The notes below the pieces were generated by a model. That model was not told the DNA's origin, made no database searches, and saw nothing but the letters and a program-made list of their open reading frames with translations. From Isurus oxyrinchus (lineage: Eukaryota): DNA of 64,000 bases. Location of the stretch: positions 3,224,001 to 3,288,000 of the forward strand of contig JANJGN010000052.1 in NCBI GenBank assembly GCA_026770705.1. The letters are read 5' to 3'. Positions within the stretch are counted from its first letter, which is position 1, and every line of letters starts with the position of its first letter. Shown one piece after another: positions 12,685 through 52,695 of the stretch. The position numbers were made by a program, and so were the translations under genes.

Positions 12685-12933
12685 TCAGTTTTTCTGGAAC
12701 CTGATCTGTGCGTATTCCGTGTCCTCGCTCCTGTGCACAGTCCTGTCACCGCTGGGCAGCTTTGAAAAGTTGATGTTGGCGTAGAGAAGCTCGTCGGTAT
12801 TGTCGGGGTTCCCATGTCCAACATCGCCTCCCACTGGACCTTCAGAGAGATCCCAGGGAGCTGGGGTCTCCCCCTCGCTAGCTGTGTCTCTGGTTGTGTT
12901 CTGGGGCTCAGTAATCAGCACGTTCTGTTTACC
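12685..12933 (-). CDS. Gene A last exon: cytoplasmic tail with ITIM (LLYANI) and ITSM/ITIM-like (TEYAQI)
   Basis: tttctctgtag acceptor, phase 0; GKQNVLITEP...DELLYANINF...EDTEYAQIRFQKN*; same motif layout as CD33-related Siglec tails. Confidence 0.9.
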   Translation of the reverse strand, partial: GKQNVLITEPQNTTRDTASEGETPAPWDLSEGPVGGDVGHGNPDNTDELLYANINFSKLPSGDRTVHRSEDTEYAQIRFQKN

Positions 12934-13114
12934 CTACAGAGAAATGGAAACAGAAGACATCCTCACATCATTTACTGGCACTGATAGGGTTAAATTATTG
13001 TGCAGCCTCATTAGTGTCAGTCGTGTCTCAGTGGGTTTAACCCTTTTTTTCCCTCTCTTTCTCTGTCTCTCTTTCTCTCTCGCTTTCTCTCTCTCTTTAT
13101 AATTTAATCTCTAT

Positions 13115-13482
13115 CACACTCCAACAGTGCAGCACTCCCTCAGTACTGACCCTCTGACAGTGCAGCACTCCCTCAATACTGACCCTCTGACAGTGCAGCA
13201 CTCCCTCAGTACTGACCCTCTGACAGTCCAGCAATCCCTCAGTAATGACCCTCTGACAGTGCAGCACTCCCTCAATACTGACCCTCTGACAGTGCAGCAC
13301 TCCCTCAGTACTGACCCTCTGACAGTGCAGCACTCACTCAGTACTGACCCTCTGACAGTGCCGCACTCCCTCAGTACTGACCCTCTGACAGGGCAGCACT
13401 CCCTCAGTACTGACCCTCTGACAGCGCAGCACTCCCTCAATACTGACCCTCTGGCAGTGCAGCACTCCCTCACTACTGACAT
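13115..13482 (-). repeat. 33-bp minisatellite array, opposite orientation, intronic
   Basis: About 11 units of cagtgcagcactccctcagtactgaccctctga. Confidence 0.9.
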
Positions 13483-13680
13483 CAGGTGCCTTGTGTTCAG
13501 GTTTCTGGTCAAAGAGCGAGTGATGGAGGGTGACAGAGGCTGGGAGCGAGAGACAGTGCTGACCACTGAGCCATTGCTTCACAGGGAGATATCTATGTGT
13601 AACCCGGCTGAGAATCTGGTATACGTGTTGTCGACACACTGAGGTTGAAGCTTTGAAGTGAGTGTAAACAGCTCCTGTAC

Positions 13681-13762
13681 CTGGTGCTTCACAGAGAGTG
13701 ACCTGGGGGTCAATGCAATGTCACTGGTCCCTGAAACTCTCTCCTCCATCGCTGTCTTTCTC
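13681..13762 (-). CDS. Gene A cytoplasmic exon 1
   Basis: ttgcag acceptor and CAG|gtac donor; 82 nt, phase 2 to 0, bridges TM and last exon in frame: (K)RKTAMEERVSGTSDIALTPRSLSVKHQ. Confidence 0.8.
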
Positions 13763-14639
13763 CTGCAATAACACAATATCACACTGTGGTTATCATATAG
13801 CAGAGAGTCAGTGCAGCACAGACACAGAGCCCACTGTAACCTTACACCAACGACTGGACTGTCTCTAGTTCCAATAAGGGATATCAGCGTGACATCACTA
13901 TAATGGAAGTGTGTCATGTGATCCAATCTTAGTTTGACTTTTGCTTTGAGCAGAACACACACTCACGGCTCTGATGCCTTCAATCTTTATCCGTATGTAT
14001 AACCGTTCTCGTGCCGAGTCCTGATAAACAAACCGACAACATTCTCACCCAAACCCTGTGAGCGATTGGTGCTTTGTTTCTTGTACAGTAAATAAGCCTA
14101 AGGTATAATATCATTATAATAACACGCCATATCTTTTACCCCCCCTCCACCCCTGCTCTTCCCCCCATAGCCCTTCAAATGTTCCCCCTTCAAGTATTTA
14201 TCCAATTCCCCTTTTGAAAGATCCTATTAAATCTGCTTCCAGCGCCCTTTCAGGCAGCGCCTTCCAGATCACAGCAACTGATTATTATTCATCTGGATAA
14301 CAGGCAATGAAAAACACTGTCTGGATCGTAAGGGACAAAGAGACCAGTTAGGGAGAGGCATCTGGCGCTTAACACAAGGGAAACAATCACCGACTTCAGG
14401 AAAGAACATTGAAGCAAATATTTATCCCGGAGTAATCGTGCAGAGTGAGGAATCTCTGGGTCTCGTGATTGTTTACCTGGATACAGGACAATGAAAGGTT
14501 CTCTCCGGATCAGAGTGGACACAGGGATCACTTACAGAGAGGGAACTGGTGCTGATCCCAAGGGAAACAATCACCGACTTAAGGAAAGAACATTGAAGCA
14601 AATGTTTATATTAAAATCAAGTTAAATCTTCAGACTTAC

Positions 14640-14736
14640 TTTCTCACACAGATGAAGATGAAGATTCCAGCCAGGAAAACACTCAACATGATCCCAGCCG
14701 TGAACAATCCTACTGTCCATTTACTGGAGTCTCTAC
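14640..14736 (-). CDS. Gene A transmembrane exon (uncharged TM)
   Basis: ttttacag acceptor and gtaagt donor; 97 nt; GRDSSKWTVGLFTAGIMLSVFLAGIFIFICVRK. Confidence 0.9.
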
Positions 14737-15162
14737 CTGTAAAAACAGCCATTAATTACTGCACTACAGGTTTACAATGATGCTCCGATGTATCTCGAGA
14801 AGCGATACACTCACTCAGTGTTTAAATACTCATTCTCGGGCAATGCTGACATTTATTGTCCATCCCTAGTTTCCCCTTGAGAAGGTGGTGGGGGGTCTTC
14901 CTCCTGAACCACTGGTTTGTCCCAAACTGGGAGACCAGTTCAGAGGGCAGGTAAGAGTTAACCATGTTGGTGTCTGAGACTGGAGTCACATATACACCCA
15001 GACCTGTTAAAATGGACAGGTTTCCCTCACTAAATTTGTAATTATATCTTTAATTTCTATATATATGTATCAACTAACATCACTAAAATAATCATTTATC
15101 ACCTCATCTTCACACTGTTGTTTGTGGGATCTTGCTCTGCACAAATCAGCTGTTGCGTTTCT

Positions 15163-15694: not shown

Positions 15695-15988
15695 CTTTGA
15701 CCCACAGATAAACCTTGAACATGGCTTCCCCGTGTGGGTTTTGAACCGAGCAGGATGCCATCACTCCCCCCTCATCCTGGGGTCTCATCAGGGTGAGGGA
15801 ACCAGTCACCAGATGCCCATCTCTGACCTGCCACGACACAAAACCTCCGTGTGTTTGGTTACCACTGATGTTGGCACTGGGCAGGTGCCAGGTGAGGTCT
15901 CCGGGTGGGTTGGAGTTGGCCACACAGACGCAGGTGACCCCCTCTGACCTCCGAGTGCACTCCGACTGCTGGGAAATCTCCGGCTTAT
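15695..15988 (-). CDS. Gene A membrane-proximal Ig domain (d6), resembling the last domain of MAG/Siglecs
   Basis: 294 nt, phase 1-1; YKPEISQQSECTRRSEGVTCVCVANSNPPGDLTW...ASCSVQNPHGEAMFKVYLWVK. Confidence 0.85.
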
Positions 15989-17016: not shown

Positions 17017-17292
17017 ATTGTACGTTCAGGTGGGTGATGTTGGAGGTGCTGTTACCCACTGGGTTCCTCGCTGTGCAGTAGAAACCTGCATCATTCTCCC
17101 GTGTTACAGGAGTGAAGGAGAGAGTGCGGCTACTTGTGTTTAACTGGGTGCTGGTGTTCCCCTCGATCCTGAACCAAGTGTAATGAGATATCGGAGGGAC
17201 ACTTTCACTGGAGCAGGTTAATGTGATATTGCTTCCCTCTCTTATCCCACCTGAGGATCTGCTGATGGACACCATCGTCTCCTGTGGGGGAT
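17017..17292 (-). CDS. Gene A Ig domain d5 (C2-set)
   Basis: 276 nt, phase 1-1; PPQETMVSIS...IREGSNITLTCSSESVPPISHYTWF...DAGFYCTARNPVGNSTS. Confidence 0.9.
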
Positions 17293-19156: not shown

Positions 19157-19438
19157 GTTCCACAGTGATGGTTATGAACCCCTCCACTGCTCCATGTTCA
19201 TTCTCTGCCACACACTGATATTCTCCAGTGTCCCTGGATGTAACGTGAGGAATCACCAACCACAGCTCATTGTTGGAACTTGTTCTGTTCATTGGGACAT
19301 TAAGATGTCGCCACGTCAGGTTAGAAGCTGGGAAGCTCTCGACAGAGCAGATTATCACTGCAGAATTCCCCTCAATTATATTGATCGATGAAGCGTTAAT
19401 CATATCAAGAGAAGTAATTGATGGGTTCCGTGGTGCAT
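19157..19438 (-). CDS. Gene A Ig domain d4 (duplicate of d3)
   Basis: 282 nt, phase 1-1, tttag acceptor and gtgagt donor; ...SAVIICSVESFPASNLTW...DTGEYQCVAENEHG. Confidence 0.9.
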
Positions 19439-20346: not shown

Positions 20347-20628
20347 ATTCCACAGTGATGTTTATGAATCCCTCCACTGCTCCATGTTCATTCTCTGCCA
20401 CACACTGATAGTTTCCAGTGTCCTTGGATGTAACATGAGGAATCACCAGCCACAGCTCATTGTTGGAACTTGTTCTGATCAGTGGGACATTAAGATGTCG
20501 CCACGTCAGGTTAGAAGCTGGGAAGCTCTCGACAGAGCAGATTATCACTGCAGAATTCCCCTCAATTATATTGATCCATGAAGCGTTAATCATATCAAGA
20601 GAATTGATTGAGAGATTCCGTGGTGCAT
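20347..20628 (-). CDS. Gene A Ig domain d3
   Basis: 282 nt, phase 1-1, ttttag acceptor and gtgagt donor; DAPRNLSI...DTGNYQCVAENEHGAVEGFINITVE. Confidence 0.9.
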
Positions 20629-21589
20629 CTAAAAACATATAAAGATTTTAACGTGAGCAAACATAGTGCACAGCAAGACTCCATGCATCATGTCTCTGTA
20701 TCTGATGTCTGTATGCATTTCTAGGTACCTTCCCTCAAGATATTTTCCTATGTCACATTTACAATGGGCACTGCCTATGTAAACTGTCACACTGCAGGAG
20801 CATTCTCCCACCAGAGACCCTGCCCATCCAGATTTAAAGAAACTCCCTTTCACATCCTCAGAATGTCCCCAAGGGCTTGACAGGCAATGATTGTATTTGA
20901 TCGATGGAGCACTGAGGGGTAAATCTACAATTCTCTGTTCAGGAGGTTGCTCATCCAATTCAGGGTCTTGTTGATCTGGAGTTTACCTTCCTTCAGCACA
21001 GAATCGGAGCTGACACCGAGACTCCAGTGCAGCACTGANNNNNNNNNNNNNNNNNNNNNNNNNNNNNNNNNNNNNNNNNNNNNNNNNNNNNNNNNNNNNN
21101 NNNNNNNNNNNNNNNNNNNNNNNNNNNNNNNNNNNNNNNNNNNNNNNNNNNNNNNNNNNNNNNNNNNNNNNNNNNNNNNNNNNNNNNNNNNNNNNNNNNN
21201 NNNNNNNNNNNNNNNNNNNNTGTGCATGTGAATGTGCGTGCTTACGTGTGTGTGTGTATGCGTGTGTGTGTGTGTGTGCGTGTGTGTGCATGTGCGTGTG
21301 TGCAGGTGTGTGTGTGTTGTGTGTGCGTGTGTGTTGTCTGTGTGCGCGTGTGCGTGTGNNNNNNNNNNNNNNNNNNNNNNNNNNNNNNNNNNNNNNNNNN
21401 NNNNNNNNNNNNNNNNNNNNNNNNNNNNNNNNNNNNNNNNNNNNNNNNNNNNNNNNNNNNNNNNNNNNNNNNNNNNNNNNNNNNNNNNNNNNNNNNNNNN
21501 NNNNNNNNNNNNNNNNNNNNNNNNNNNNNNNNCATGTGTGTGTGTGTCTGTTGGTGCGTGTGTGGTCTGTGTAACCTGTAAACCTAACC

Positions 21590-25172: not shown

Positions 25173-25469
25173 CTTGTACAGTTAGTACAAGGGTCCGCTC
25201 CGATGAAACAGATGGATATCTCACTCTGCAGCAGAGTGTGTGTCCGTGGTGTTTGAGTGATGGGATCAGGGTCAGAACAGAAGTATAGGTCAGAGTGACA
25301 CCATGCTGAGTTACAGTGTTTGAGACTGATCCACGTACGTCAGTGGGAGTGTCCCAGGTTAAGACAGGTGCTGCTGTTCCATTGCACGTTGTGTTGAAGG
25401 TGCAGCTTACATCCACACGCTTTCCTGCAATAATTTCAGCAGGGAATATCATGGGTTTATCTGTGAAAT
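25173..25469 (-). CDS. Gene A Ig domain d2 (Siglec C2-set)
   Basis: 297 nt, phase 1-1; DFTDKP...VSCTFNTTCNGTAAPVLTW...CRVRYP; carries the extra B-C loop Cys used for the Siglec V-C2 disulfide. Confidence 0.92.
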
Positions 25470-26317: not shown

Positions 26318-26686
26318 CAGAAACGTGAAGCTGGGTTACAGGATAGTAGTTGTAACTATTACTGCTGTCAAATTCTATTCTGAAAAAATAAGGTCCTGCA
26401 TCTTCCCGTCTGATGTTGTTTATAATCAGGGAACAGTCGCCATCTTTCAGGTCTCCAGACAGCCGGGTCCGATGGTGGAACCGTGGTAACTCGTGACGGT
26501 GATCTTTGGAGTGAAAGGCAATGGGAGCCCAGGGAATCTGTTTCTCATTATTAAACCAGACTCCACCTCGTGGTTGATTTTCCAAATGTGCTGGATAACT
26601 GTAATGACATGGAATCTGTACACACGAACCTTCCTGCGCTGTCACCTCTCGTGGAGTGTCACCTTTCCACTCTTGTGACAGTCCAA
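26318..26686 (-). CDS. Gene A Siglec V-set domain, essential Arg present
   Basis: 369 nt, phase 1-1; N-terminal Trp, SCVQIPC and GDCSL (B-E disulfide, no F-strand Cys), DAGPYFFRIE, Tyr at Arg+9. Confidence 0.95.
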
Positions 26687-27548: not shown

Positions 27549-27588
27549 CTTGGAGAAGTGACAGGAGGAAGTAAGATTTCCCGATCAT
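27549..27588 (-). CDS. Gene A leader exon (signal peptide)
   Basis: acaATG; MIGKSYFLLSLLQ + G|gtaata; joins V as ...LLQVGLS-QEW; acceptor at 27630/27631. Confidence 0.88.
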
Positions 27589-27661
27589 TGTCCACTCCCA
27601 GATATTTCCTCAGCTTCTAACTCTGAAGTTCTGAAAGAGAAAGGAGTTAATGAGACCTCAC

Positions 27662-31197: not shown

Positions 31198-31337
31198 TCA
31201 ATCAGGCTGTCGACTTCCTTTCACTGTTTGTCTCTCCCAGACACAGACTCCAGCGATAGTGATAACCACAGCCACAAGGAATATCACAGCTCGTATTCCC
31301 AGGATCAGGATCACGTGCAGAATCTCTCCTCCACTGT
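31198..31337 (-). CDS. Gene B TM plus short tail exon with intramembrane Arg (activating-type receptor)
   Basis: tttctttctgtgtgttctctag acceptor, phase 1; DSGGEILHVILILGIRAVIFLVAVVITIAGVCVWERQTVKGSRQPD*; not in the ORF track. Confidence 0.8.
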
Positions 31338-32455: not shown

Positions 32456-32608
32456 ATTCCACAGTGATGGTTATGAAACCCTCCACTGCTCCATGTTCAT
32501 TCTCTGCCACACACTGATAGTCTCCAGTGTCCCTGGATGTAACATGAGGAATCACGAACCACAGCTCATTGTTGGAACTTGTTCTGTTCATTGTGATATT
32601 CAGATGTC
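32456..32608 (-). pseudogene. 5'-truncated Ig3-type exon in gene B, probably skipped
   Basis: MNRTSSNNELWFVIPHVTSRDTGDYQCVAENEHG..TVE|gtgagt retained; acceptor and B-strand Cys half are missing. Confidence 0.8.
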
Positions 32609-32931: not shown

Positions 32932-33228
32932 CTTGCACAGTTAGTATGAGGGTACGCTCCGATGAAACAGATGGATATCTCACTCTGCAGCTGAGAGTGT
33001 GTCCGTGGTGTTTGAGTGATGGGATCAGGGTCAGAACAGAAGTATAGGACAGAGTGACACCATGCTGAGTTACAGTGTTTGAGACTAATCCAGGTACGTC
33101 AGTGGGAGTGTCCCAGGTTAAGACAGATGCTGCTGTTCCATTGCACGTTGTGTTGAAGGTGCAGCTTACATCCACACGCTTTCCTGCAATAATTTCAGCA
33201 GGGAATATCGTGGGTTTATCTGTGAAAT
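32932..33228 (-). CDS. Gene B C2-set domain
   Basis: 297 nt, open; 7 aa differences from gene A d2 by eye. Confidence 0.9.
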
Positions 33229-33922: not shown

Positions 33923-34291
33923 CAGAAACGTGAAGCTGGGTTACAGGGTAATAGTTATGGCTCGGACCATTGTCAAATTCTATTCGGAATAAATAAGGTC
34001 CTGCATCTTCCCGTCTGATGTTGTTTATAATCAGGGAACAGTCGCCATCTTTCAGGTCTCCAGACAGCCGGGTCCGATGGCGGAACTGTGGTAACTCGTG
34101 ACTGTGATCCTTGGAGTGAAAGGCAATGGGAGCCCAGGGAATCTGTTCCTCATTATTAAACCAGACTCCACCTCGTGGTTGGTTTCCCAGACACGATGGA
34201 TAACTGTAATGACATGGAATCTGTACACACGAACCTTCCTGAGCTGTCACCTCTCGTGGAGTGTCACCTTTCCAATCTTGTGACAGTCCAA
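33923..34291 (-). CDS. Gene B V-set exon V4
   Basis: 369 nt open, AG/GT intact; YLFRIE; extra Cys in YPSCL. Confidence 0.85.
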
Positions 34292-36228: not shown

Positions 36229-36597
36229 CAGAAACGTGAAGCTGGGTTACAGGGTAATAGTTATGGCTCGGACCATTGTCAAATTCTATTCGGAATAAAT
36301 AAGGTCCTGCATCTTCCCGTCTGATGTTGTTTATAATCAGGGAACAGTCGCCATCTTTCAGGTCTCCAGACAGCCGGGTCCGATGGCGGAACCGTGGTAA
36401 CTCGTGACTGTGATCCTTGGAGTGAAAGGCAATGGGAGCCCAGGGAATCTGTTCCTCATTATTAAACCAGAGTCCACCTCGCGGTTGGTTTTCCAGACAC
36501 GATGGATAACTGTAATGACATGGAATCTGTACACAGGAACCTTCCTGCGCTGTCACCTCTCGTGGAGTGTCACATTTCCACTCTTGTGACAGTCCAA
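36229..36597 (-). CDS. Gene B V-set exon V3
   Basis: 369 nt open, AG/GT intact; YLFRIE; YPSCL and WKC. Confidence 0.85.
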
Positions 36598-38534: not shown

Positions 38535-38903
38535 CAGAAACGTGAACCTGGGTTACAGGGTAATAGTTATGGCTCGGTCCATTGTCAAATTCTATTCTGA
38601 AAAAATAAGGTCCTGCATCTTCCCATGTGATGTTGTTTATAATCAGGGAACAGTCGCCATCTTTCAGGTCTCCAGACAGCCGGGTCCGATGGTGGAACCG
38701 TGGTAACTCGTGACTGTGATCCTTGGAGTGAAAGGCAATGGGAGCCCAGGGAATCTGTTTCTCATTATTAAACCAGAGTCCACCTCGCGGTTGGTTTTCC
38801 AGACACGATGGATAACTGTAATGACATGGAATCTGTACACACGAACCTTCCTGCGCTGTCACCTCTCGTGGAGTGTCACCTTTCCACTCTTGTGACAGTC
38901 CAA
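38535..38903 (-). CDS. Gene B V-set exon V2
   Basis: 369 nt open, AG/GT intact; YFFRIE; YPSCL. Confidence 0.85.
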
Positions 38904-40441: not shown

Positions 40442-42050
40442 AAACTTAAAAGAGGGATGAAATGGTTAGTGAGAGAGAGAGAGTGAGTGTGAGGGATGGA
40501 GAGGGCTTAAGGGAGGGTATTACGGAGCTCGGTCCCCAGGCAGCTGAAGGCATGGCCACCGATGTTAGAGTGTTGAGATCGGGGGATGGTCAAGAGGCTG
40601 GAATTGGAGGAGCGCAGAGACCTCTGAAGGTTGGTGGGTCTGGAGGAGGTTACAGAGATAGCGAGGTTTGTAGTGATTGGAGGAGTTACAGCGATAGGGA
40701 AGCTTTTAGGGGCAGGAGGAAGTTACAGAAATAGGGAGGGTTGTAGCGGCTGGAAAAGTTAAGAGAGATTGTGAGAGTGTAGGGTCTGGAGGAGTTTGCA
40801 GAGGTAGGGAGGGTTGTAGTGACTGGGGCAGGTTACAGGGGCAGGGAAAGTTGTCGGGACTGGAGCAGGCTACAGAGATAGGGAAGCTTTTAGGGGCAGG
40901 AGGAAGTTACAGAAATAGGGAGGGTTGTAGTGGCTGGAGGAGGTTGCAGAGATTGGTAGGTTTGTTGGGCAGGATGAATTTACAGATATAGGGAAGCGGT
41001 AGAGGCTTGAAGAGGTTACAGAGAATGGGATGGTTGTAGGTACTGGAGGAGGAGGAGGAGATTACAGAGATAGTGAGGAAACAAAGATGAAAATTTGGAC
41101 ATTGAGACTTTGCTTGACCAGGAGCCAGTCTCGGTCATCGAGCAGAGCGGGTGATAAGGGAACGGGACTTGGTGTGAGTAAGGACGTGGTCAGCAGTTTT
41201 GAATGGCCTCAAGTTTATGGAGTGTAGAGCGTGTGTTGGAACAGTCGAGACTGGAGGTAATGAAGGCGTGGATGAGGGTTTCAGCAGCAGATGAGCTGAG
41301 ACAGGGTGACGTCGTGCGATGTTATGGAGGTGGAAATAGACGGTGTTAGTGAGGGCGCAGATAGGAGGCCGGAAGCTCATCTCAGGATCAAATGGGACAA
41401 CAAAGCTGTGAACAGATTGGCTTCAATCTCAGAGAGCTGCCAAGGAGAGGAATGGAGTTGGTAGCGAGGGAACAGAGTTTGGAGCAGGGAATGAAGACAA
41501 TGGCTTCAGTCTTTCCAATATTTAATTGGAGGAATTTCTGCCCATCCAGTACTGGATGTCGGATAAGCAGCCTGATAATTTAGCAGCAGTGGAAGAGTCG
41601 AGAGAGGTGGTGGTGAGGTAGAGCTGGGGATCCTCAGTGGACAGGTGAAAACTAACACTGTTCAGATGATGCTGCAAAGCCATTGCAAGTGATTCTCTGG
41701 CTACGATGAGATGGATAAGAATGGAGCCAGGGGAGAGCAGTCCCACCCAGCTGGACGACACTGGAGAGGTGTTGGAGGAGGATGGTGTGGTCGAGCGTGT
41801 CAAAGGCTGCAGACAGATCGAGAAGGACGAGGAGGGAAAGTTGACCTTTGTCACAGTCACACAGGATGCCATTTGTGACCTTGATAAGAGCTGTTTCAGC
41901 ACAGTGGCTGGGGTGGGAACCTGATTGGAGGGATTCAAACATGGAGTTCCGGGAAAGATGGGAACAGATTCGGGAGATGGAAACAGGTTGCAGGACTTTG
42001 GAGGGGAAAGAGAGGCTGGAGATGGGACGGGGGTTTACACGGACAGTGTG
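40442..42050 (-). mobile_element. L2-type LINE remnant
   Basis: ETALIKVTNGIL...LLVLLDLSAAFDTLDH; CLSDIQYWM; FHLHNIAR. Confidence 0.85.
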
Positions 42051-42306: not shown

Positions 42307-42681
42307 CAGAAACGTGAAGCTGGGTTTCAGGACGGTCGTTGTATCTATTCCTGTTGTCAAATTCTAGGCTGAATAAATAATATCCTGCATCTTCCCGTCT
42401 GATGTTGTTTATAATCAGGGAACAGTCGCCATCTTTCAGGTCTCCAGACAGCCGGGTCCGATGGTGGAACTGTGGTAACTCGCGATTATGATCCTTGGAG
42501 TGAAAGGCTATAGACCGTTCATTCCATTTTTCCCAATTCCTTCTCATATACCAGATTCCGACTGGTGATCTCGCTACTAAATATGATGGATAACTGTAAT
42601 TACATGGAATCTGTACACACGAACCTTCCTGCGCTGTCACCTCTCCTGGAGTGTCACCTTTCCACACTTGTGATAGTCCAA
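42307..42681 (-). CDS. Gene B V-set exon V1: divergent, essential Arg replaced by Ser
   Basis: 375 nt open, ccctag acceptor and gtaagt donor; GIWYMRRNWEKWNERSIAF; DAGYYLFSLE. Confidence 0.88.
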
Positions 42682-43084
42682 CTAGGGAGAGAAATATCAA
42701 TATTTAACTCTGAATGTTTTCTCAATCCACTAGACTCAATATCCACCCCCTCCATCACTGGGGCACACAGGCTGCAGTCTGGATAATCCACAGGTCACAC
42801 AATGAATGCCCCAAGGTTTCACAACAGATTGAAGAGAATTCCGGACACAGGAGTGGACAAGTTCATTCCAAATTGGCTCATGACCCTCAGGTACCTATTT
42901 AGTGAAGTCAGTCTGCCACCCAACACAGTGTCTACAAGACACACTAATTGAAGTGAGTTCACTGCTCATTTACAACGTAGGACAATGGATTAGGACCCTT
43001 CAGAATTCCCCCATTATCACCATCATGAATCATGAATTGGCCTCGCTGTCCTAGATCCTCAGTGTCTAAGGCAGTGGTTCCTAT

Positions 43085-44010
43085 TGTGATGTAAGTATAA
43101 TAATTTTCATAATATTTTATAGTATATTGTGAAGTAGGTTTATGGGGGTACGTGTGATGGGTCTGCATGTGATTTAAGTACATTTGGAGTTAATTAGATT
43201 GGAAGTTTAAAATGATCAAAAGGAGCTAGGTGCTTGACATGCTATTGAGGAAACATGGATGCTGCTTAGCATGGAAGGTATGAAGAGAATTTGCATTTTT
43301 ATTTCAATGAAGGGGTTGTTGGATTTCAAAGGAATCTTAGCTTGTTTACAACTAGCCAGATAAGCAAGACTAAGGAATGTGTTTATTTTTCTCAAAGGCT
43401 CCTGGCAATATGGGCACCACGAAAGAGTTTGTTATGTGGAAGATACAGTTTCAAAAACATATGGAACAATAGAATTTTCATGTTACAAAGAGAGAAATAT
43501 ATATCTATCAGGGAGAATGAAAGGCTATGTGTCAGAATGCCATGTAAGATCTAACACGAGTGTGTGATATAGTCTTAATGAAACCTCTAGCATTTGTGCA
43601 CAAGCCTGCTATCCAACAGAACTGAAGTTGGGGAAAAGCCACTTGGAATTCCTCTGTGCAGGGTATTGCTTTTATATTGTGTTAACTTGCTGGGTTTGTT
43701 TTAAATATAAAGTCTATTTTTGGACCGTTGCCTTAAAGGGAGTGTAACTGGGAGTCAGTTTAATTCAGAATTTTAAGAATTATTATAGTGGTAATTGTAG
43801 AGTTATGTATGTGCTTCAAATCATTTATTTTGAGAGCAAGTATTTTAATTTAATTTTCAAATCGCTAAAGGTCTTTGTGTAATTATTGCTTCTGAATTCA
43901 GTGCACACATCTCATAATAAATACAAATTGCAAAATCATTATGATCATGTGACCATCTTTCTCTCATGGACTTGCTCTGCCTGGCACACATCACCTGCCA
44001 AGTGATAACA
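43085..44010 (+). mobile_element. Solo LTR-like element
   Basis: TGTGA...TAACA ends, imperfect TSD ctat/ctgt, AATAAA near the 3' end. Confidence 0.55.
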
Positions 44011-44069
44011 CTGTTGTAATATGCCTTTCAGGGACAGCAGCATGACATCACTCGAGGGGAAGTGTGTCA

Positions 44070-45331
44070 TGTGATTTTAGGAATTGGGTATAGCTTAAGT
44101 AAGTTCTATGTGTATTTGTGTGTGTTAGGGATAAGGCATATGTTTATGTTCAAGTTTAGTTTGATTTCTGTATTTGTGTGTTAAGAAAGGAGGAAACTTC
44201 AGTTTTGGTTTCATTTTCGTTTAGCAATCTAATGGGGTTTGATGTCTCTTGAAGGGAAGTCAAAACAAACACAAGGTGTAAGAAACTGTGCTGTTGCTAA
44301 GCAACAGTGATCCAGAGGGACGGACCCATAGAGACAGAGAAAAACAGAAATGTGCTTTCAGTTTGGTTGAAAGGAGTTGCCAGGAGAAGCAGCAAAGGAG
44401 CGGGACAGATAGTCAGTCCCAAAGTAAAGAAGAAGCCAAAACTATCGAGTGGAACAGGAGAAAGGGCCAAGAAGACCTTCTTCTCCAAAGAAGATCAGGA
44501 ATCTGAAAAAGGTCCTGTTAAGTCGAGATAAGATTGAGGAGCAGAGGAGGGATCCAAGCTAAAAGAGAAAAAGCAAAAGGACACAGACATAAAGCAAAAA
44601 AGGCTGGTTAGAAGCCAGAAGATCATAGGTGACAGCTAAATGTTGATGTCTTCTTACTATGACCATGTGAAGCCATGGTGTTCCATTGGCATGACTGAGC
44701 ATTGGAAAGACAACGCGTAGAAGGAAGGCTGAATGCATGTGGCGATCCAGGGGGCAGGAACATGGGAAGGAGAGTTTGAAATCGTGGAAGTGGACCCTTG
44801 TGGAAGGTCTCTGAGTGAAAGTGTCATGTTGGAGAAGATTCCAAAGAGAGCACTTGACGAGTAGAGATTGGAAACTCTCATGTGAAAGATACAGTTTTGT
44901 AAGACCAGTTGCCTCATGGTGAAACAAGTGTCTGGAGTCAGTTGAGCTGAAACCCATAGCATTTGTTCCAATTGGGGTCTATCACTTGGTTACAGAATGT
45001 GGTGTCCCTGACACCAGGTCGTCTATTGGTTTGCATGAACTGTGTACTTAGTGTGAACATGAGAGTATAAGATAGTTATTGTAACTTGTATTCTACTTAT
45101 GAATCTGTAAATGTATAGGTCTGGGTGAAGGAGTAATGTAATATAGTTTGTCTTTCCTAGTTTAATAAATGTTTTATTCTTTTGTTAGAAGGTCATCAGA
45201 TGATTCCTGTGACTCTGTTCAGCAGCAGCACTCCACATTCCTAAATAAAAAATAAAAGTTAGGACCTATCAAGCTGAGTTCCACCCTGGGATCTGACTTG
45301 CCCAGTAGTAACATCAGCTGGGATGATAACA
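44070..45331 (+). mobile_element. Solo LTR-like element
   Basis: TGTGA...TAACA ends, AATAAA at ~45164 and ~45244; flanks rejoin into sequence similar to 13875-13970. Confidence 0.6.
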
Positions 45332-45519
45332 CCATCCAGTCCAAGTTTCACTTTGGCCTGTGAGCAGAACACAGCTCACACAGTTTGGCTGCAGGTGTCT
45401 CCCAGCTTTCTATCCTTGTATATCTGTTCTCATGTCCCTGTTCTAAATAACTGAACCCACAATGTATTTATCCAATTCCGTATCAGTGGCTGGTGCCTTT
45501 ATATCATTATAAAAACACA

Positions 45520-48500
45520 ACATGGTGATCAGCGGTGGCCAAACATTCTGGCCGCAAGATTCAGTACAGGTATGACATGGTGAACAGCCTGAGATCGAGC
45601 TACATGACATGAGACGACCCTCGACGCTTTGGTCAGACCACAACAGAGACACAGCATCAGAGAGGGTTGAAATCGCAGTGTACTGACTGCTCAGGAAACC
45701 TTTGAAGACACAGTGACGGGAAAGAGCTCAAGTAAAGAGCTGGGGAGCAGACGGATCCCTCGTGGTGGGATTACAGCACACGGCCTGTAGGTCAGTGAGT
45801 GGGACAGTGTGTATCGCCAGGACCAGCAGCGGGTTAGCTCAGTCAGGGAAGGCGAGTGACCAGTGTGTGGGCTGGATCGATAGTGAGCGAGGGAGAGTCA
45901 AACACACAAAAACCATTATAAAAATCAGCCCAGAGAAGTTAGTGATTATAACGGGCAGCTTCGAGATTGCTGAACAGCAAATTGAATAAAAAACAAAGAC
46001 TCCATTACTCCGTGGTGTGTTCCTGCCACAACCCGTCTTCGTGGGCGGAGCTTCGGAAAAGCACACGAAAGGGGCTAAAGCGACACTCATCCCAGATCCT
46101 GTAGGAGAAGGAAGGTCAAAGGAATATTGTCAGAATGTCCACGAAATTCCCCAGTTTGAACTGGGATGTAGCTGACCGACTATCTGAATTCAGAATGTTT
46201 AAACAGCGTACAGAGCTCCGGTTTCCTGATTCAGGTGTGACTGAACCAGACGAACAAGCCATAAAAATTCACCTCGCGATTGGGAATGAAGGTCTACACA
46301 GGCTGAACACATCAGGATTAACAGCAGAAGAGCAAAAGGATCCCCAATAGATATGGATGACATTGGAAGACAGGTGAAACTCCAAATTCATCAACTAGAG
46401 TTTATGTCATTTCATCAGCCTACACAATCCATAGACCACTTCATCAGCCGATGTAGAGAAAAGGGTACGCACTGTGATTTCAAACACAGAGCCTGCAGAC
46501 AGAGTTGTTGAGTTGGCGATCGCATCCACTCCCATGGAAGCCTTCCAGAAAGATCTGCTAGATAAGACCAAAACCTATAGCATTGAAGAGCTACTCAAGG
46601 ATGGACATAAATACGAAGTAATCCTCGCAGGTCAACAAAGCTTACAGGTCCTCAGTACAACATCAATTGTTGACACACTCACTAGCACATCCAAACCTAG
46701 TGAGACGTGTGGCAGGCACCAAGGAAATCCCCAGCTTTCCACCAATCCTGCAAGACTTGTGGCAGAAAGGGCCATTGACAGCGGCAGGGCACTAGAGCAA
46801 AGGCTGATGCAGCTACAAAGAGCCATGCGCTGATCCAAACAGACCCTACACAACGGGGAACCTTCAAGCAATAAGAATGACCATCCGCTATCCCATCAGG
46901 AACATATACATGTGGTGACTGACAAACCAGGAAATGGCGATGATGTGCACGACGAGACGAGGTGCAGTGATCGATATTCCACCTCTCACACATATCCTGA
47001 CGTGGCTTGCCAATAAATTGTGGATTGTTGTCCTTAATGATATCTCTGGGCACATCAAAGAAACTGAAAATGTCCCATAGGTGTTAGATTTTCTGGCCCC
47101 ACCCACTGCCAGGATTGTCCAGTCCGGCCGAAAGCCAATGGATTTATATTTGTCCCAATCTCCCACGGCAGGTCCCACCATGACTGGGCTGGCAAACCCC
47201 GGCTTAGAGTTTTTGCAACACTTGTGCTCAACGTATTGTGCAACTGTTGAACAATTTCACACCTATTACACCATCAATCTCATGGAGAACAGATGCCGTC
47301 ACTTCACCCGCACTATTGGCCAAGATTCCAATTATCTGCCCTGAGAAAGTTTCTACCTCCCCTTTATTGGCCAAGATTGATACAGGGACAAGTGCCAACA
47401 TTCCCCTCCCCCAGCCCACCCCAGCAAATTTTCAAAGACATATATCCAAGGACATGGAAGTCCATGGGGAAACCTACTGCTGTGTACAACACTTCACCAA
47501 CTCCATGTGCAGAATCCATAGTCCTAGAGTGCAAGTACAATCAATCTTCCTGGGTGTCACAGATGTTCTACATCGTGCAGAATAAAGGCTGAGCAATTGC
47601 AAGTCTACCGGCAAGCGGTGACCTCACACTAGTGACAACCCATGGAATCTGTCAGACCTCACATGGGTCAACCTCAGAAACTACCCATCACCTCAGTTCA
47701 TGGACATAACATTGAAATATGCAGAAAGTTTCAACAATATTGGCAGTTTCAAGGGAGCTGCAACATTACACCTGCAGGAGAATGCAAGTCTGTCAATTGA
47801 TCCAGTATATTTAGCACAACAGAAATGACAGCAGCTACAAAAGGGAACAGTGAAAAATTCTACAGGAACTGGGGAAATATCATTGAAAGGGTGGCCTGAT
47901 TCAGCTTGACCTCATCGGGATAAGTGAGGCATCTCCCAGGGAACCATTTTTAATGGCAGGCAGGGCATCATACCGGAGCCTTTGTGATCCTATATTCTTC
48001 AACAACTTCATCCCTCACACATGGGCACAGATCAGACAAGGAGACTCACAAGAGATATACTCCCTGGCCGGGTATGAAGAATGACCTTGAAGTCGTTGTA
48101 GGGAAGTACGAGGCTTGTCAAGAGGATGACCCAAGTCAGCACAAAGAACCACTGATTCCACAGGAAATTCCTGCCTATTCTTAGTCCAAAATCAGGTCTG
48201 AATCCTTTCATTTCCATGTCACTGACTTCATCATCATCGTCGACAGCTTTACCAGATATCCCGTTATTCAAAAATAGCACAACACACAAAGCACAACTGG
48301 TGCACACACTCTGAGCATTATTTTCAGTTTATTTGGTGAGCCTAGGGACATGACTACAGATAATCTGGAGTATCAATCACACTACTTCTTCTCCTCATTA
48401 CCCCAGATCTAACAGCCTCGCTGAATGAATGATTCACACAGTGAAATCCCTAATTCTCAAATGTAGACAGGCCAAGCAAGATCCACACATTGCAATGTTA

Positions 48501-49350
48501 CATCTGAGATCGACACCTACAACTGCAACTTTGTTAAATTCATTCATGGGATGTGGGAGTCACTGGCCAGGCCAGGATTTATTACCCATCCCTAATGTAA
48601 GAGTCAACCACATTGACGTGGAGTCTGGAGTCACATGTCGGCCAGACAATTTTGTTCCCTAAACGGCACTGGTGAACCAGGTGGGATTTCCAACAATGGT
48701 TTTGTGGTCATCACTAGACTTTGAATTTCATATTTTTATTAAATTCAAATTCCATCATCTATTATGGTCGGATTTGAACCCATATTCTCAGGCCATTACC
48801 CTGGGTCTCTGAATTACTCATCCAGCAACAATACCACTACACCATCACCTCACCTTATTCCATCACTGACAGAGATCATGTTTGGTGGGCCAGTAGTGAC
48901 CAATTTCGCTACTCTTACCCATTCTACTCTCTCAGAAACCAGAGGGCAACTTTTAAAACTACAAGAGAAGATAAGGAATGTTCATGATAAAAATGGAGGT
49001 GCAGAGTTGCCAAGTTTACAGTTGGGACAAGTTCACATCCAGCATCCCACAGAAGGTTCATGACCACCAGCCGAGGTGACAAGGATTTGTTCAGAACCAA
49101 GGGCCTATGGAGTCAAACACACAAGGGCACAGCGCTGAGGCGGAACCGAGGATAAATCAGATCTATTCCCGCTCCTATTCCATCGAGGAGAAGATCCCAC
49201 ATGAAATCAGGAACAACATCCAAGGATGACAATCCCACAGATCACTGTGAGCAGTTAAAGACACCTCCAGACAAGGTAACCAGCACAAGATCTGGGTGGA
49301 CCAGAAGGTTAAATCCACACTTTAGAGACTCAAATATTCAACAGTTCCAT
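45520..49350 (+). mobile_element. Degenerate Ty3/Gypsy internal region (gag, protease, integrase remnants)
   Basis: PBS-like aaca-TGGTG; gag-like LSEFRMFKQR; protease AKIDTGTSANI; integrase WPGMKNDL..CQ and SSPHYPRSN; many stops. Confidence 0.8.
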
Positions 49351-50381
49351 GCACTTATGTAATTGTCAATAAATATGAACATGATATGAGAAACCGTTTG
49401 TTCCCTGCCCTTCTGAAAGAGCCATTCCTGCAGCGGGAGCCTGAAGAGTTACTGATAAGAGATTTAATTTATTGGATTGTAGAATGATCCGGAACTGAAG
49501 GAAGCCATTTGGCCCATCGAGCCTGTGCTGGGCCTTTGAAAGATCTGTCCAATTAGTCCCACTCTCACCTCTGCTCTCTCCCCCACAGCCCTGCAAAATG
49601 TCCCCTTCAAGTATTTACCCAGTTCCCCTTCTGAAAGTTCCTGTTGAATCTGCTTCCACCGCCCTTTCAGGCAGTGAGTCAATGGTCTCTCTCTGAGCTG
49701 CAAAGTGATAAGTTTCAATGAAATATAAACTCTGCAGCAGATCAGAAACAATCATGATAACTCAGAATATTTGACAGTTTTACATACAGACAGCTTTGCC
49801 TCCCTTCTCTCTATCAGTTATCTTGCTCCCTTATCGAATTTTCTAGCATGGTGAGAATGGACAGGAAGTGTGACGCTGAACTGCCTGTCTAATCTAAGAG
49901 CTTCTGTGTTGTCTTCATGGGAAATTCTGATGAAAATCAGCAAGAGAGAAAAATTTCAGGGCATTGATATCGGAATGCTAGCATCAGGATAGACTTCATC
50001 CCTCAGTTTTTATCCCTGCTTCTCTATTCAGCCGATCGCTCCCCTGTCACTTGCTGACCTACACTGGCTCCCAGTCCAGCAAAGCCTCAATTTTCAAAAT
50101 CTCTTCATTGATTCCTTATCCCTCCATCCTCCCTCTCCACTCCCTATCACTGTCACCTTCTCCAGCCCTGAAACCCTTTGAAGTCTCTGCTGTCCTGCAG
50201 TTCTGCTGTCAGACAGGGAGTCAGTGTGAATCATTGAGCACAGGGGTGATGGGTGAATGGGACTTGGTGTGAGTTTGTACACTGGCTCACTGCTGAATCG
50301 GTTCCCTATCAGAGCTCAATAAGAATGATCTTTTACAAAGACTATTCACCATAAATCTGTCCAAGCTGACGATGATATTAC

Positions 50382-50421
50382 CTTGGAGAAGTGACAGGAG
50401 GAAGTAAGATTTCCCGATCAT
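50382..50421 (-). CDS. Gene B proximal leader exon
   Basis: MIGKSYFLLSLLQ+G|gtaata, same as the gene A leader. Confidence 0.85.
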
Positions 50422-51239
50422 TGTCCACTCCCAGATATTCATTTAGCTTCTGACTCTTAAACTGTGAAAGAGAAAGGAGTTATTGAGACCTCACCTCTTG
50501 TCCGACAGCTCTCGAGAGATCAGAACTGCTTTTAGACAATGTCTTCACAGACTAATTTGGTTCTCTGTGGGATGATAGGTGCTCTGCAGAGAGTTAAAAA
50601 GCTTTAAAAAAATAAATCAATGAAGGACTTGCATTTCTATAGCACATTTCACCACCTCAGGATGTCCCAAAGCTCATGTCCCTGCTCTTCCCTCATCCTT
50701 TGAGCTAGAAAGATGTTCTGTACAACAGACCTGAGCCTCACACCCGGATCTCAATAATTAGTAGAAATCTTTCGAAGGCATCAATCATTGGAATCTGTCT
50801 TTATAAAGTCACAACATCAACAAAGGACGGTGTTGGTGGTGGAAGTGAATTCCAATCGTTCCGTTACTTACCCAGTACCTGTCCGACTGCTCGCCTGGGG
50901 AGGAACTGCCCACACGCTCTGCTTGGGCTGAATGACCTCTTCCTGTGCTGCTCCCTCTGTGTGTTTAATGAGAAAGGGTGCATGTGTCACTTTGAGACAA
51001 AATGAGGAAGTTGGATCAAAGTGACAGAGCAGCTCATGTTTTGAGATGTTGGTGAACTGTTAACCCTTTGTGTCCTGACCCTGTGGTGATATTTCTGCTC
51101 ACAGGTGGACAGTCATTGACCAGGAATTTCTCCTGTGGGTCAGTGGGTTTCACAGCCAAATTCAGGGGGTCAGAACGTTGTGGGGTTCAAGACCCCTTTC
51201 AGGGGACGTCTGTCCCACAGAGTAGACTGAAACTCCCCA

Positions 51240-51455
51240 GTGTCAGTACTGAGCAAGTGCTGCACTGTCGGATGGTCATTGCTGAGCGCGTGTTGCACTT
51301 TTGTAAGGTCAGTACTGAGGGAGATCTCCACTGTTTGAGGGTCAGTACTGAGGGAGTGCTGCACTGTCAGAGGGACATTAATCAGGGAGTGCTGCAATGT
51401 TGGAGGATCAGTACTGAGGGAGTGCTGCACTGTTGGAGGGTCAGTATTAAGGTGC
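51240..51455 (+). repeat. 33-bp minisatellite array at a rearrangement junction
   Basis: Visible units; homology to 63509-64000 begins at its right edge. Confidence 0.85.
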
Positions 51456-51607
51456 TGATTTACAAGACAGGACAATGGATTAGGAGCCCTCAGAACTCCC
51501 CCCATTATCACCGTCATGAATCACTAATTAGCCTAACATTCCTGTCTGCTCTTCAACACAGCTGATTGGCTAATCTAATTCAATCTGATTGGTGCACTTT
51601 GTATGTC

Positions 51608-51865
51608 CATTGTCTAAGGAATCTCTTTGGATCCTCATTGTCTAAGGAATCTCTTTGGATCCTCATTGTCTGAGGAATCTCTTTGGATCCACATTGTCTG
51701 AGGAATCTCTTTGGATCCTCATTGTCTAAGGAATCTTTTTGGATCCTCATTGTTTAAGGAATCTCTTTGGATCCTCATTGTCTAAGGAATCTCTTTGGAT
51801 CCTCATGTCTAAGGAATCTCTTTGGATCCTCATTGTCTATGGAATCTCTTTGGATCCTCATTGTC
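51608..51865. repeat. 28-bp minisatellite (paralog at 63665-63870)
   Basis: cattgtctaaggaatctctttggatcct, about 9 copies. Confidence 0.92.
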
Positions 51866-52655
51866 GAAGGGATTATTTCTGATCCAAACCCCATATTGTT
51901 GTATTGTTGATTCCGATGCAGCATTGTAGACTGACTTGTCCCCAAGCTCAGCACTGACCCTACTCCAGCAGACACTGTGAAACACACTAACAAAGCGCCT
52001 CTAGCCTGAGCTCTGCATGTGTCGAGAGAAAGACAAATATACAAACTGAATATTGACACCTTTACACACGGACAGCTTTACCTTCCTTCTCTCTTTCAGT
52101 TATCTTGCTCCCTTATTGAAGTATCTAGCAAGGTGAGAATGGACAGGAAGTGTGACACTGAACAGCCTGTCTATTCTAGGAGCTGCTGTGTTGTCTTCAT
52201 GGGAAATTCTGATTAAAATCAGCAAAAGACACAAATTTCATTCCTTTGCTATCGGCGTCCAAGCATCAGGATAGACTTCATCCCCCAGTATTTATCACTG
52301 TTTCTCAACTCAACACCTCACACCCTCTGCCACTCGCTGACCTGCACTGGCTCCCAGTCCAGCAGAGCCTCGAGTTTAAGACTCTCATCCTCAATTTCCA
52401 TTCCCTCCATTCCTCTTCTCCAATCACTTTCTCCTCCAACCATGCAAACCTCAAAGTCCTCTGCTCTCCTCCAATTCTGCTGTCAGACAGGGAGTCAGTG
52501 TATATCAGTGAGCACAGGGGTGATGGGTGAATGGGACTTGGTGTGAGATTGTACACTGGTTCACTGCTGAATCTGTTCCCAATCACAGCTCAATAAGAAT
52601 TATGTTTTACAAAGGTGATTAGCCATAAATCTATCCGAGCTGACAATGATATTAC

Positions 52656-52695
52656 CTTGGAGAAGTGACAGGAGGAAGTAAGATTTCCTGATCAT
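52656..52695 (-). CDS. Distal leader exon whose own V exon appears deleted
   Basis: MIRKSYFLLSLLQ+G|gtaata; its downstream intron matches the gene C leader-V intron. Confidence 0.75.

What the first reader, a model, noticed from the sequence alone, without database searches (positions are those of the whole stretch)
12685..52695. Paired inhibitory/activating Siglec-like receptors in a probable cartilaginous fish
Seen: adjacent genes A and B share an identical leader, V domains differing at ~11/123 aa and C2 domains at ~7/99 aa, but have unrelated C-termini. A has an uncharged TM plus LLYANI (ITIM) and TEYAQI (ITSM-like). B has a TM exon missing from the ORF track with an intramembrane Arg (ILILGIRAVIFLV, codon 31291-31293) and a 12-aa Tyr-free tail. 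Known: this is the layout of primate paired Siglecs 5/14 and 11/16, where a basic TM residue recruits DAP12. Inference: an independently evolved or very ancient paired sialic-acid receptor system; I cannot verify whether it has been described.
Basis: partly seen in the sequence, partly recalled or inferred. Interest (0 to 1): 0.9.

Follow-up and report, generated by a model that had tools for sequence, protein, structure and literature searches.

The report
Shark paired activating and inhibitory Siglec genes
Two neighbouring shark genes encode Siglec-type immune receptors with nearly the same sugar-binding end but opposite signalling ends, a layout described so far in mammals and reported absent from bony fish.

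Summary
On the minus strand, gene A (27588-12685) encodes leader, V, five C2-type Ig domains, an uncharged membrane span and a tail with LLYANI and TEYAQI. Gene B ends in C2 (33228-32932) and a membrane exon (31337-31198) with a buried Arg and a 12-residue Tyr-free tail.

The predicted C2-to-membrane splice (32932 to 31337) stands in transcript contigs of three runs from three studies. The V domain is a Siglec V domain by sequence and by predicted fold, with the sialic-acid Arg and the Siglec cysteines. A's tail lines up with mammalian CD33-type tails. The Arg exon is conserved in several shark orders, while the V domains attached to it are not one clade.

Corrections:
- B holds four V exons and two candidate leaders, and its upstream exon use is unresolved.
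- A and B are not an exclusive pair. A third neighbour with another tail shares the cassette.
- Adaptor coupling and sugar binding are inferred, not shown.
- The assembly gaps lie in an intron of A.

RefSeq pipelines already name such shark genes Siglec-like. I found no paper on them. This scan noted the same family many times elsewhere in this genome.

The parts
27549..27588 (-). Gene A leader exon (MIGKSYFLLSLLQ, ends in phase 1)
   Evidence: same leader in Cetorhinus and Carcharodon proteins
26318..26686 (-). Gene A V-set exon with the YFFR sialic-acid Arg motif and three Siglec-type Cys
25173..25469 (-). Gene A first C2-set exon, with the extra Cys typical of Siglec domain 2
21039..21532 (.). 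Two assembly gaps (21039-21220, 21359-21532) and the CA-rich DNA between them, inside an intron of gene A; not filled
20347..20628 (-). Gene A Ig exon ('DAPRN' type), first of a tandem exon pair
19157..19438 (-). Gene A Ig exon ('DAPRN' type), second of the pair (91% protein identity to the first)
17017..17292 (-). Gene A Ig exon
15695..15988 (-). Gene A membrane-proximal Ig-like exon
14640..14736 (-). Gene A membrane exon, no charged residue in the span
13681..13762 (-). Gene A first cytoplasmic exon (RKTAMEERVSG...)
   Evidence: matches Cetorhinus P0003
12685..12933 (-). Gene A tail exon with LLYANI (ITIM) and TEYAQI (ITSM-like), then stop
31198..31337 (-). Gene B membrane exon with buried Arg (codon 31293-31291), 12-residue tail and stop
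32458..32606 (-). Relic 3' half of a 'DAPRN' Ig exon with an intact GT donor, between B's C2 and its membrane exon
   Evidence: one contig of run X7 joins it to the membrane exon
32932..33228 (-). Gene B C2-set exon
33923..34291 (-). Gene B V exon nearest the C2 exon (copy 1 of the 2306-bp tandem repeat)
36229..36597 (-). V exon, tandem copy 2, intact
38535..38903 (-). V exon, tandem copy 3, intact
42307..42681 (-). Distal-type V exon; Ser replaces the sialic-acid Arg
50382..50421 (-). Candidate leader exon of gene B, identical to A's
52656..52695 (-). Second candidate leader exon (MIRK...), in an 87% duplicate of the leader-bearing segment

Best explanation
The window is a stretch of a large, tandemly expanded Siglec gene cluster of a lamniform-like shark.

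Gene A is an inhibitory-type Siglec. It has a sialic-acid-type V domain, five further Ig domains, a neutral membrane span, and a CD33-type tail. Once phosphorylated, the tail's ITIM (LLYANI) and ITSM-like motif (TEYAQI) would recruit SH2 phosphatases.

Gene B, 3.6 kb upstream, carries the same kind of V-C2 cassette. Its V is 89% and its C2 93% identical to A's in protein. B ends in a membrane span with a buried Arg and almost no tail. It would therefore signal only through a separate ITAM- or YxxM-bearing adaptor chain with an acidic membrane residue.

The two genes, and a third neighbour with a YxN-type tail, arose by duplication and repeated exchange of the ligand-binding exons among genes with different signalling exons. 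As a result, similar ligands can give opposite signals.

Shown here: the exons, reading frames, fold, motifs, B's C2-to-membrane splice, and the conservation and shuffling of the modules. Inferred: sialic acid binding, phosphatase recruitment, adaptor coupling, and the cell types involved.
For: Sequence and fold of the V domain:
- Its best solved-structure matches by sequence are Siglec-5, CD33, Siglec-8, MAG, Siglec-7, Siglec-10 and sialoadhesin (E 1e-16 to 1e-13). YFFRIE aligns on Siglec-5's YFFRVE. The next family, pIgR, scores 8e-9.
- The AlphaFold model has pLDDT 91. Among its listed Foldseek matches, every chain down to rank 47 is a Siglec V domain, with query-normalised TM-scores (TMq) of 0.80-0.88.
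- Pfam gives V-set plus Ig_CD22 for V and C2-set_2 for C2.
- The closest non-shark proteins among 1.84 billion representatives are annotated as Siglecs of turtle, elephant, bat and gar.

Gene A:
- Its tail aligns end to end with elephant CD33-like and bat Siglec-8 tails, with both Tyr motifs in register. The motif definitions are taken from PMC2722167.
- All its exon phases fit, giving 755 residues.
- It is collinear with Carcharodon protein P0222.

Gene B:
- The joint 31337 to 32932, with GT..AG ends, stands in contigs of runs X2, X5 and X6, from three studies.
- The Arg membrane exon is 76-95% identical in proteins of Carcharodon, two Scyliorhinus species and two Chiloscyllium species. A stingray protein has a similar Arg span.

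Module exchange:
- V domains of Arg-exon proteins do not form a clade. The label needs 8 changes for 8 rows.
- The AU test rejects a single clade with p 2e-70 for all V domains and p 0.00047 for membrane-proximal V only.
Against: - No binding, signalling or adaptor data exist, and no shark adaptor sequence was available to test.
- The A-B identity (89-93% in protein) is well below the near-identity of primate Siglec-5/14.
- A's V is closer to the third gene's V than to B's, so the pairing is a property of the family rather than of these two genes.
- The bridging contigs have only 28, 28 and 58 letters on the C2 side. Those of X5 and X6 carry a Leu-to-Gln change also seen in Carcharodon paralogues, so they may come from a near-identical paralogue.
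- The V-to-C2 joints cannot tell the V copies apart.
- A's own splicing and its continuity across the gaps were not tested with reads.
Confidence: 0.7

Rival explanations
1. A and B are simply two members of a very large modular receptor family. There is no dedicated A-B partnership. Any activating member may counterbalance any inhibitory member, or none.
For: - Three neighbouring genes share the V-C2 cassette with three different tails. A's V is 94.9% identical to gene C's V against 92.7% to B's. B's C2 is 97.6% identical to C's.
- Dozens of related models exist per shark species.
- This scan holds 79 notes containing the words 'Siglec' and 'pair'; all eight shown lie in this genome.
Against: A and B are adjacent, on the same strand, with 89-93% identical ligand-binding domains. 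That meets the working definition of paired receptors (PMC13358205). This rival differs from the best explanation only in how exclusive the pairing is.
Confidence: 0.2
2. B is a decaying or decoy copy. It is a truncated duplicate that lost the inhibitory tail, and its Arg span has no adaptor partner.
For: - B sits among repeats and carries a relic half exon.
- Its distal V has lost the sialic-acid Arg.
- The neighbouring gene C has stop codons in its V exon.
Against: - The Arg exon and its short tail are kept at 76-95% identity across shark orders.
- All four V exons, the C2 exon and the membrane exon are open, with intact splice sites.
- The C2-to-membrane splice is found in transcript contigs.
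Confidence: 0.07
3. The genes have a Siglec fold but are not sialic acid receptors. The V domains bind another ligand, such as a protein or another glycan.
For: - Binding was not tested.
- A and B differ mostly in loops near the binding face, at V residues 32-35 and 100-111.
- One V exon lacks the Arg.
Against: - The Arg in the YFFR motif is kept in A and in three of B's V exons, and Arg at that alignment position (R102) is kept in at least 90% of the 36 aligned relatives.
- The fold matches ligand-bound Siglec structures.
Confidence: 0.12
4. Gene A as modelled is an assembly chimaera. The gaps at 21.0-21.5 kb would join the 5' part of one gene (leader, V, C2) to the 3' part of another.
For: Two runs of N of estimated length lie between the C2 exon and the next exon, in microsatellite DNA. 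No read evidence for that splice was obtained.
Against: - The exon order on both sides matches Carcharodon protein P0222 from leader to tail.
- No membrane exon lies between the C2 exon and the gaps.
- No V exon lies between the gaps and gene A's tail exon at 12685.
- No copy of the three Ig exon types tested lies between the gaps and the C2 exon.
Confidence: 0.06

Closest known systems
Primate paired Siglec-5 / Siglec-14 (and Siglec-11 / Siglec-16)
   Same: - Closely linked genes of the same family.
- Similar V and first C2 domains.
- One partner carries a proximal ITIM and a distal TEY..I motif. Siglec-5 has LHYASL and TEYSEI (PMC2722167).
- The other partner has a basic membrane residue and a short tail.
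- The activating partner has fewer Ig domains.
- There are signs of sequence exchange between partners.
   Different: - Protein identity here is 89-93%, not near-identity.
- Three tail types share the cassette.
- The activating gene has an array of four V exons.
- The Arg membrane exon is an old cassette conserved across shark orders, rather than a recent acquisition.
- The adaptor is unknown.
Mammalian CD33-related Siglecs as a group
   Same: - V domain with the essential Arg and the three-Cys pattern.
- C2 domain with the extra Cys.
- Tail with an ITIM plus TEY..I close to the C-terminus, collinear with elephant and bat tails.
- A clustered multigene family.
   Different: - Orthology is unresolved. 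The V domain scores about equally against CD33-type Siglecs, MAG and sialoadhesin.
- The published view, based on teleosts, is that fish lack this group (PMC7226832).
Human Siglec-12 (two V-set domains; stated from general knowledge)
   Same: Related shark models, and probably gene B, carry tandem V-set domains. The distal V in this window lacks the sialic-acid Arg.
   Different: There are up to four V exons here, three of them inside a 97%-identical 2.3-kb tandem repeat. Their use in mRNA is not established.
RefSeq pipeline models in other elasmobranchs (for example Carcharodon XP models P0171, P0161, P0222; Scyliorhinus P0162)
   Same: Same leader, V, C2, Arg membrane exon or ITIM tail, with 76-97% identity per exon.
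   Different: These are automatic names ('Siglec 12', 'CD33-like', 'MAG-like') with no study behind them. This window's genes are further members in another genome.

Membership tests
Siglec (I-type lectin) family | N-terminal V-set domain most similar to Siglec V domains in sequence and fold | tested here: met
   - The 17 best PDB matches by phmmer are all Siglec chains, E 1.5e-16 to 1.2e-13.
- Every listed Foldseek match down to rank 47 is a Siglec V domain, TMq 0.80-0.88.
- Pfam gives V-set plus Ig_CD22.
Siglec (I-type lectin) family | Essential Arg on the F strand | tested here: met
   - YFFRIE or YLFRIE is present in A and in the 34k, 36k and 38k V exons. It aligns on YFFRVE of Siglec-5 and YFFRME of CD33.
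- Not met in the 42k V exon, which has Ser there.
Siglec (I-type lectin) family | Cys pattern: an intrasheet disulfide plus an extra Cys in V paired with an extra Cys in domain 2 | tested here: met
   - C21, C26 and C84 of V are invariant in 36 aligned sequences.
- C2 has ..VSCTFNTTC.., aligned on MAG ..VSCMVPDNC...
- The disulfide bonds themselves were not shown.
Siglec (I-type lectin) family | Binds sialylated glycans | not testable with these tools
   Needs recombinant protein and glycan arrays.
CD33-related Siglec subgroup | Cytoplasmic tail with a proximal ITIM and a distal TEY..I/V motif near the C-terminus | tested here: met
   LLYANI and TEYAQI lie 23 residues apart. They are collinear with elephant ..LHYASV..TEYSEI.. 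and bat ..IQYATL..NEYSEI.. tails. Motif definitions are from PMC2722167.
CD33-related Siglec subgroup | Groups with mammalian CD33-related Siglecs rather than with MAG, sialoadhesin, CD22 or Siglec-15 | tested here: inconclusive
   - Bit scores: Siglec-5 63.8, CD33 59.5, MAG 58.5, sialoadhesin 54.4, Siglec-15 35.1, CD22 24.2.
- The V-domain tree has too few columns and too few reference sequences to decide.
Paired activating/inhibitory receptors | Closely linked genes with highly similar ligand-binding domains | tested here: met
   - Same strand, 3.6 kb apart.
- V differs at 13 of 122 residues and C2 at 7 of 98.
- The similarity is lower than in Siglec-5/14 and is not exclusive to A and B.
Paired activating/inhibitory receptors | One partner with an ITIM tail, the other with a basic membrane residue and a short tail, and both expressed | tested here: met
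   - The motifs are present.
- B's C2-to-membrane splice stands in contigs of three runs.
- A's expression was not tested with reads. It is supported only by collinear models in relatives.
Paired activating/inhibitory receptors | The activating partner associates with an ITAM adaptor through the basic residue | not testable with these tools
   No shark adaptor sequence was at hand. The Arg is the 11th residue of a 29-residue hydrophobic stretch, which does not tell DAP12-type from FcR-gamma-type coupling (general knowledge).
Paired activating/inhibitory receptors | Exchange (gene conversion or exon shuffling) of ligand-binding exons between partners | tested here: met
   - The Arg exon is one conserved cassette.
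- The V domains attached to it are not a clade: AU p 2e-70 and 0.00047.
- Identities among A, B and C are mosaic.

The most novel reading that the evidence does not exclude
The CD33-type Siglec module (V with Arg, C2, ITIM plus TEY..I tail) and an Arg-membrane activating counterpart were already present in the common ancestor of sharks and mammals and were lost in teleosts. In sharks, the activating gene carries an array of V exons that are chosen alternatively. One adaptor-coupled receptor could then mirror several inhibitory neighbours.
Probability: 0.15. Interest if true: 0.85.

Novelty: new member of a known kind. Interest (0 to 1): 0.6.

Why it matters
Paired Siglecs are a textbook case of host-pathogen arms races, but they have been described in mammals. 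The fish literature, which rests on teleosts, states that fish lack CD33-related Siglecs (PMC7226832).

A large shark family with CD33-type inhibitory tails and a conserved Arg-membrane activating cassette would have two consequences. It would move this regulatory logic to the base of jawed vertebrates, or else show that it was reinvented. It would also give a tractable set of natural domain swaps for studying how ligand-binding modules are shared between opposing receptors.

Tried and rejected
- Leader search. I first looked for A's leader just upstream of the V exon. An ATG-started ORF at 26828-26736 is not conserved in the other copies and was dropped. The real leader lies 860 nt upstream.
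- Hidden exon near the gaps. I suspected a decayed extra Ig exon next to them. BLAST found none of the three Ig exon types tested between 21533 and 25172.
- V-to-C2 joints. The joints to 33923 and to 36229 looked like alternative V use. The last 60 nt of both V exons are identical, so the joints cannot tell the copies apart.
- Relic half exon. A run X7 contig joins the half exon (32606-32458) to the membrane exon, with an extra letter at the joint. I found no in-frame acceptor for the half exon, so I treat it as a minor or paralogous form.
- Mammalian tails. The marmot and rhinoceros representatives had aberrant C-termini and were useless for the tail comparison. Elephant and bat sequences served instead.
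- Literature. Searches for Siglecs or DAP12 in sharks gave only noise or a single passing mention.
- Joined model. No search was made with a joined spliced protein.
- Complex prediction. None was run, because no adaptor sequence was available.


Full report
**Layout.** All genes discussed lie on the minus strand. ORF listing and self-comparison of the window showed:
- six V-type exons, at 26.7, 34.3, 36.6, 38.9, 42.7 and 62.9 kb;
- three first-C2 exons, at 25.5, 33.2 and 62.1 kb;
- a 2306-bp tandem repeat (33665-40442, 97% identical) that holds three of the V exons;
- three copies of a leader-bearing segment, at 27.4-28.2, 50.2-51.0 and 52.5-53.3 kb.

**Observation check.**
- A's leader (27588-27549) reads MIGKSYFLLSLLQ and ends in phase 1. 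The copy at 50421-50382 is identical. The one at 52695-52656 reads MIRK.
- The V exons are 369 nt and in phase 1-1. A and the B copy nearest the C2 differ at 13 of 122 codons. The C2 exons (297 nt) differ at 7 of 98.
- B's membrane exon (31337-31198) follows an AG and fits phase 1. It reads ..ILHVILILGIRAVIFLV.., with the Arg codon at 31293-31291, then 12 residues without Tyr and a stop.
- A has a neutral membrane exon (14736-14640), a short cytoplasmic exon (13762-13681) and a tail exon (12933-12685) with LLYANI and TEYAQI.
- All of A's exon phases fit, giving 755 residues. B gives 281 residues with one V and 652 with four.

**Gaps.** The runs of N at 21039-21220 and 21359-21532 lie in CA-rich DNA beside a repeat fragment, inside A's intron between the C2 exon and the 20.6-kb Ig exon.
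- No exon abuts them, so no reading frame depends on them.
- None of the three Ig exon types tested has a further copy between 21533 and 25172.
- Whether the two sides are continuous cannot be shown here. In favour, the exon order on both sides matches Carcharodon protein P0222 from leader to tail.

**Transcript evidence.** I laid contigs of four runs from four studies on 30700-36690. The runs are guessed to be RNA, from their size and from the spliced forms they hold.
- The joint 31337 to 32932 skips 1594 nt with GT..AG ends on the minus strand. It appears in X2, X5 and X6, with 28, 28 and 58 letters on the shorter side.
- The X5 and X6 contigs carry a change that turns Leu into Gln three codons before the Gly-Ile-Arg. 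The same variant is seen in Carcharodon P0160 and P0161, so these contigs may come from a near-identical paralogue or orthologue. The X2 contig lacks that change.
- Joints from the C2 start (33228) to V exon ends (33923 and 36229) are also present. The last 60 nt of those two V exons are identical, so the joints show V-to-C2 splicing but not which V.
- No V-to-V joint was among the 15 joints listed; two further joints were not shown.
- One X7 contig joins a relic half exon (32606-32458) to the membrane exon.
- A's own splicing was not tested.

**Family membership.**
- V by sequence: the V exon of A matches solved Siglec V domains best. Siglec-5 scores 1.5e-16, followed by CD33, Siglec-8, MAG, Siglec-7, Siglec-10 and sialoadhesin. 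Its YFFRIE aligns on Siglec-5's YFFRVE. pIgR follows at 8e-9.
- V by fold: a model built with 36 relatives has pLDDT 91. Every listed Foldseek match down to rank 47 is a Siglec V domain, with query-normalised TM-scores of 0.80-0.88. The sialic-acid-binding PILR comes next.
- Cysteines: the three Cys of the V domain are invariant in the alignment. The C2 exon carries the extra Cys and matches MAG and CD33 domain 2, although nectin-4 scores slightly higher.
- Non-shark relatives: among 1.84 billion representatives, the non-shark hits whose names I looked up are annotated mostly as Siglecs, from turtles, elephant, bat, gar, paddlefish and a mormyrid.
- Tail: A's tail aligns from end to end with elephant CD33-like and bat Siglec-8 tails, with both Tyr motifs in register. 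These are the motifs defined for Siglec-5 in PMC2722167.
- Subfamily: orthology is not resolved. CD33-type Siglecs, MAG and sialoadhesin score alike.

**Relatives and module behaviour.**
- The closest proteins are pipeline models from sharks, rays and skates, named Siglec-5 to -15, CD33-like or MAG-like. Carcharodon and Cetorhinus are closest.
- The Arg membrane exon recurs at 76-95% identity in Carcharodon (P0160, P0161, P0171), Scyliorhinus canicula (P0162, P0172), S. torazame (P0006, P0123), Chiloscyllium punctatum (P0022) and C. plagiosum (P0280). A stingray protein has a similar Arg span with an 8-residue tail.
- In a V-domain tree of six shark species plus the window, the Arg-exon label needs 8 changes for 8 rows, the same as shuffled labels. 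V domains group with ITIM-tailed relatives of the same genus.
- Forcing the Arg-exon V domains into one clade is rejected, with AU p 2e-70. With only the membrane-proximal V of each protein, p is 0.00047.
- Within the window the pattern is mosaic. A's V is closest to gene C's V (94.9%), and B's C2 is closest to C's C2 (97.6%).
- A against B gives dN/dS of 0.36 for V and 0.61 for C2. Exon identity is 92.7% and 96.3%, against 87-89% in the introns.
- Together this is the signature of ligand-binding exons being exchanged among genes with fixed signalling exons.

**Structure of gene B.**
- Carcharodon P0161 is collinear with the 42-kb-type V, a standard V, the C2 and the Arg exon.
- The 42-kb V groups with the first V of two-V proteins of Carcharodon and Cetorhinus.
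- S. torazame P0006 has several V domains and two full 'DAPRN' Ig domains before its Arg exon. The half exon at 32.6 kb is therefore a remnant of an older, longer form.
- B therefore probably encodes a multi-V receptor, perhaps with shorter isoforms. This remains open.

**Mechanism (inferred).**
- A would bind sialylated ligands through the Arg-bearing V domain. After Tyr phosphorylation it would recruit SH2 phosphatases.
- B would bind similar ligands and signal through an adaptor held by its membrane Arg.
- The Arg is the 11th residue of a 29-residue hydrophobic stretch. From general knowledge, that position does not distinguish DAP12-type from FcR-gamma-type coupling.

**Known or new.**
- Paired Siglecs are well described in primates (PMC4042635, PMC13358205).
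- The fish literature held here, which is based on teleosts, says fish have only Siglec-1, CD22, MAG and Siglec-15 and lack CD33-related Siglecs (PMC7226832).
- I found no paper on shark Siglec pairs. One genome paper mentions Siglecs in passing.
- Pipeline annotation already names such genes.
- This scan has 79 notes containing 'Siglec' and 'pair', and all eight shown lie in this genome. An earlier follow-up reached a like conclusion on other DNA.
- I therefore class the finding as a new member of a known kind.

**Limits.** No search used a joined spliced model. Exons were searched one by one by reference. 

Noticed in passing
33665-40442: A 2306-bp unit is repeated three times in tandem at 97% identity. 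Each copy holds an intact V exon with good splice sites, plus a retroelement fragment on the plus strand. The three V exons have Cys at V residue 33, where gene A has His.
   Followed up: partly
42307-42681: This V exon is of a distinct 'distal' type that groups with the first V of two-V proteins of Carcharodon and Cetorhinus. Here Ser replaces the sialic-acid Arg (YYLFSLEF), while the Cetorhinus counterpart keeps the Arg.
   Followed up: partly
32458-32606: The 3' half of a 'DAPRN'-type Ig exon, with an intact GT donor, lies between B's C2 and membrane exons. Contigs mapping here run on into the start of another such exon, so paralogues with several of these domains are strongly expressed. 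One X7 contig joins the half exon to B's membrane exon.
   Followed up: partly
55000-63200: A third gene lies here. Its V exon (62901-62533) has two in-frame stops. Its C2 exon (62132-61836) is intact. Its membrane exon (57232-57143) is 97% identical to Carcharodon P0016, whose tail has YxN-type motifs instead of ITIMs.
   Followed up: partly
1-3255: Remnants of a fourth gene are present. There is a 'DAPRN' Ig pseudo-exon at 2087-1827, cut short by an insertion. A membrane-exon-like piece at 554-474 is 96% identical to P0016. The stretches 62-1627 and 2208-3255 duplicate 56730-58298 and 59294-60343.
   Followed up: no
13110-13480; 28400-29140; 29350-29850; 58300-59690; 60565-61620; 2208-2602: Long minisatellites with a unit of about 33 bp give open frames on both strands (VSTEGVLHCQR-like). 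They recur within or next to the receptor genes, for example between gene A's cytoplasmic and tail exons.
   Followed up: no
49765-51073 and 52048-53344; 27409-28194: The leader-bearing segment is duplicated upstream of B (87% identity between the two copies). About 500 nt upstream of the leaders of A (28116-28039) and of B's 50.4-kb copy (50952-50872) lies a piece 77-78% identical to a cytoplasmic stretch of the YxN-tail protein P0016. The duplication unit therefore seems to have run from one gene's tail to the next gene's leader.
   Followed up: no
19157-19438 and 20347-20628: Gene A has a tandem exon duplication: two 'DAPRN' Ig exons 91% identical in protein, each followed by a CA microsatellite. 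Carcharodon P0259 has five such domains in a row.
   Followed up: partly
43000-50000: The putative first intron of gene B, about 7.7 kb, is filled with ORFs that look retroelement-derived on both strands. This may explain why it is about nine times longer than A's leader intron.
   Followed up: no
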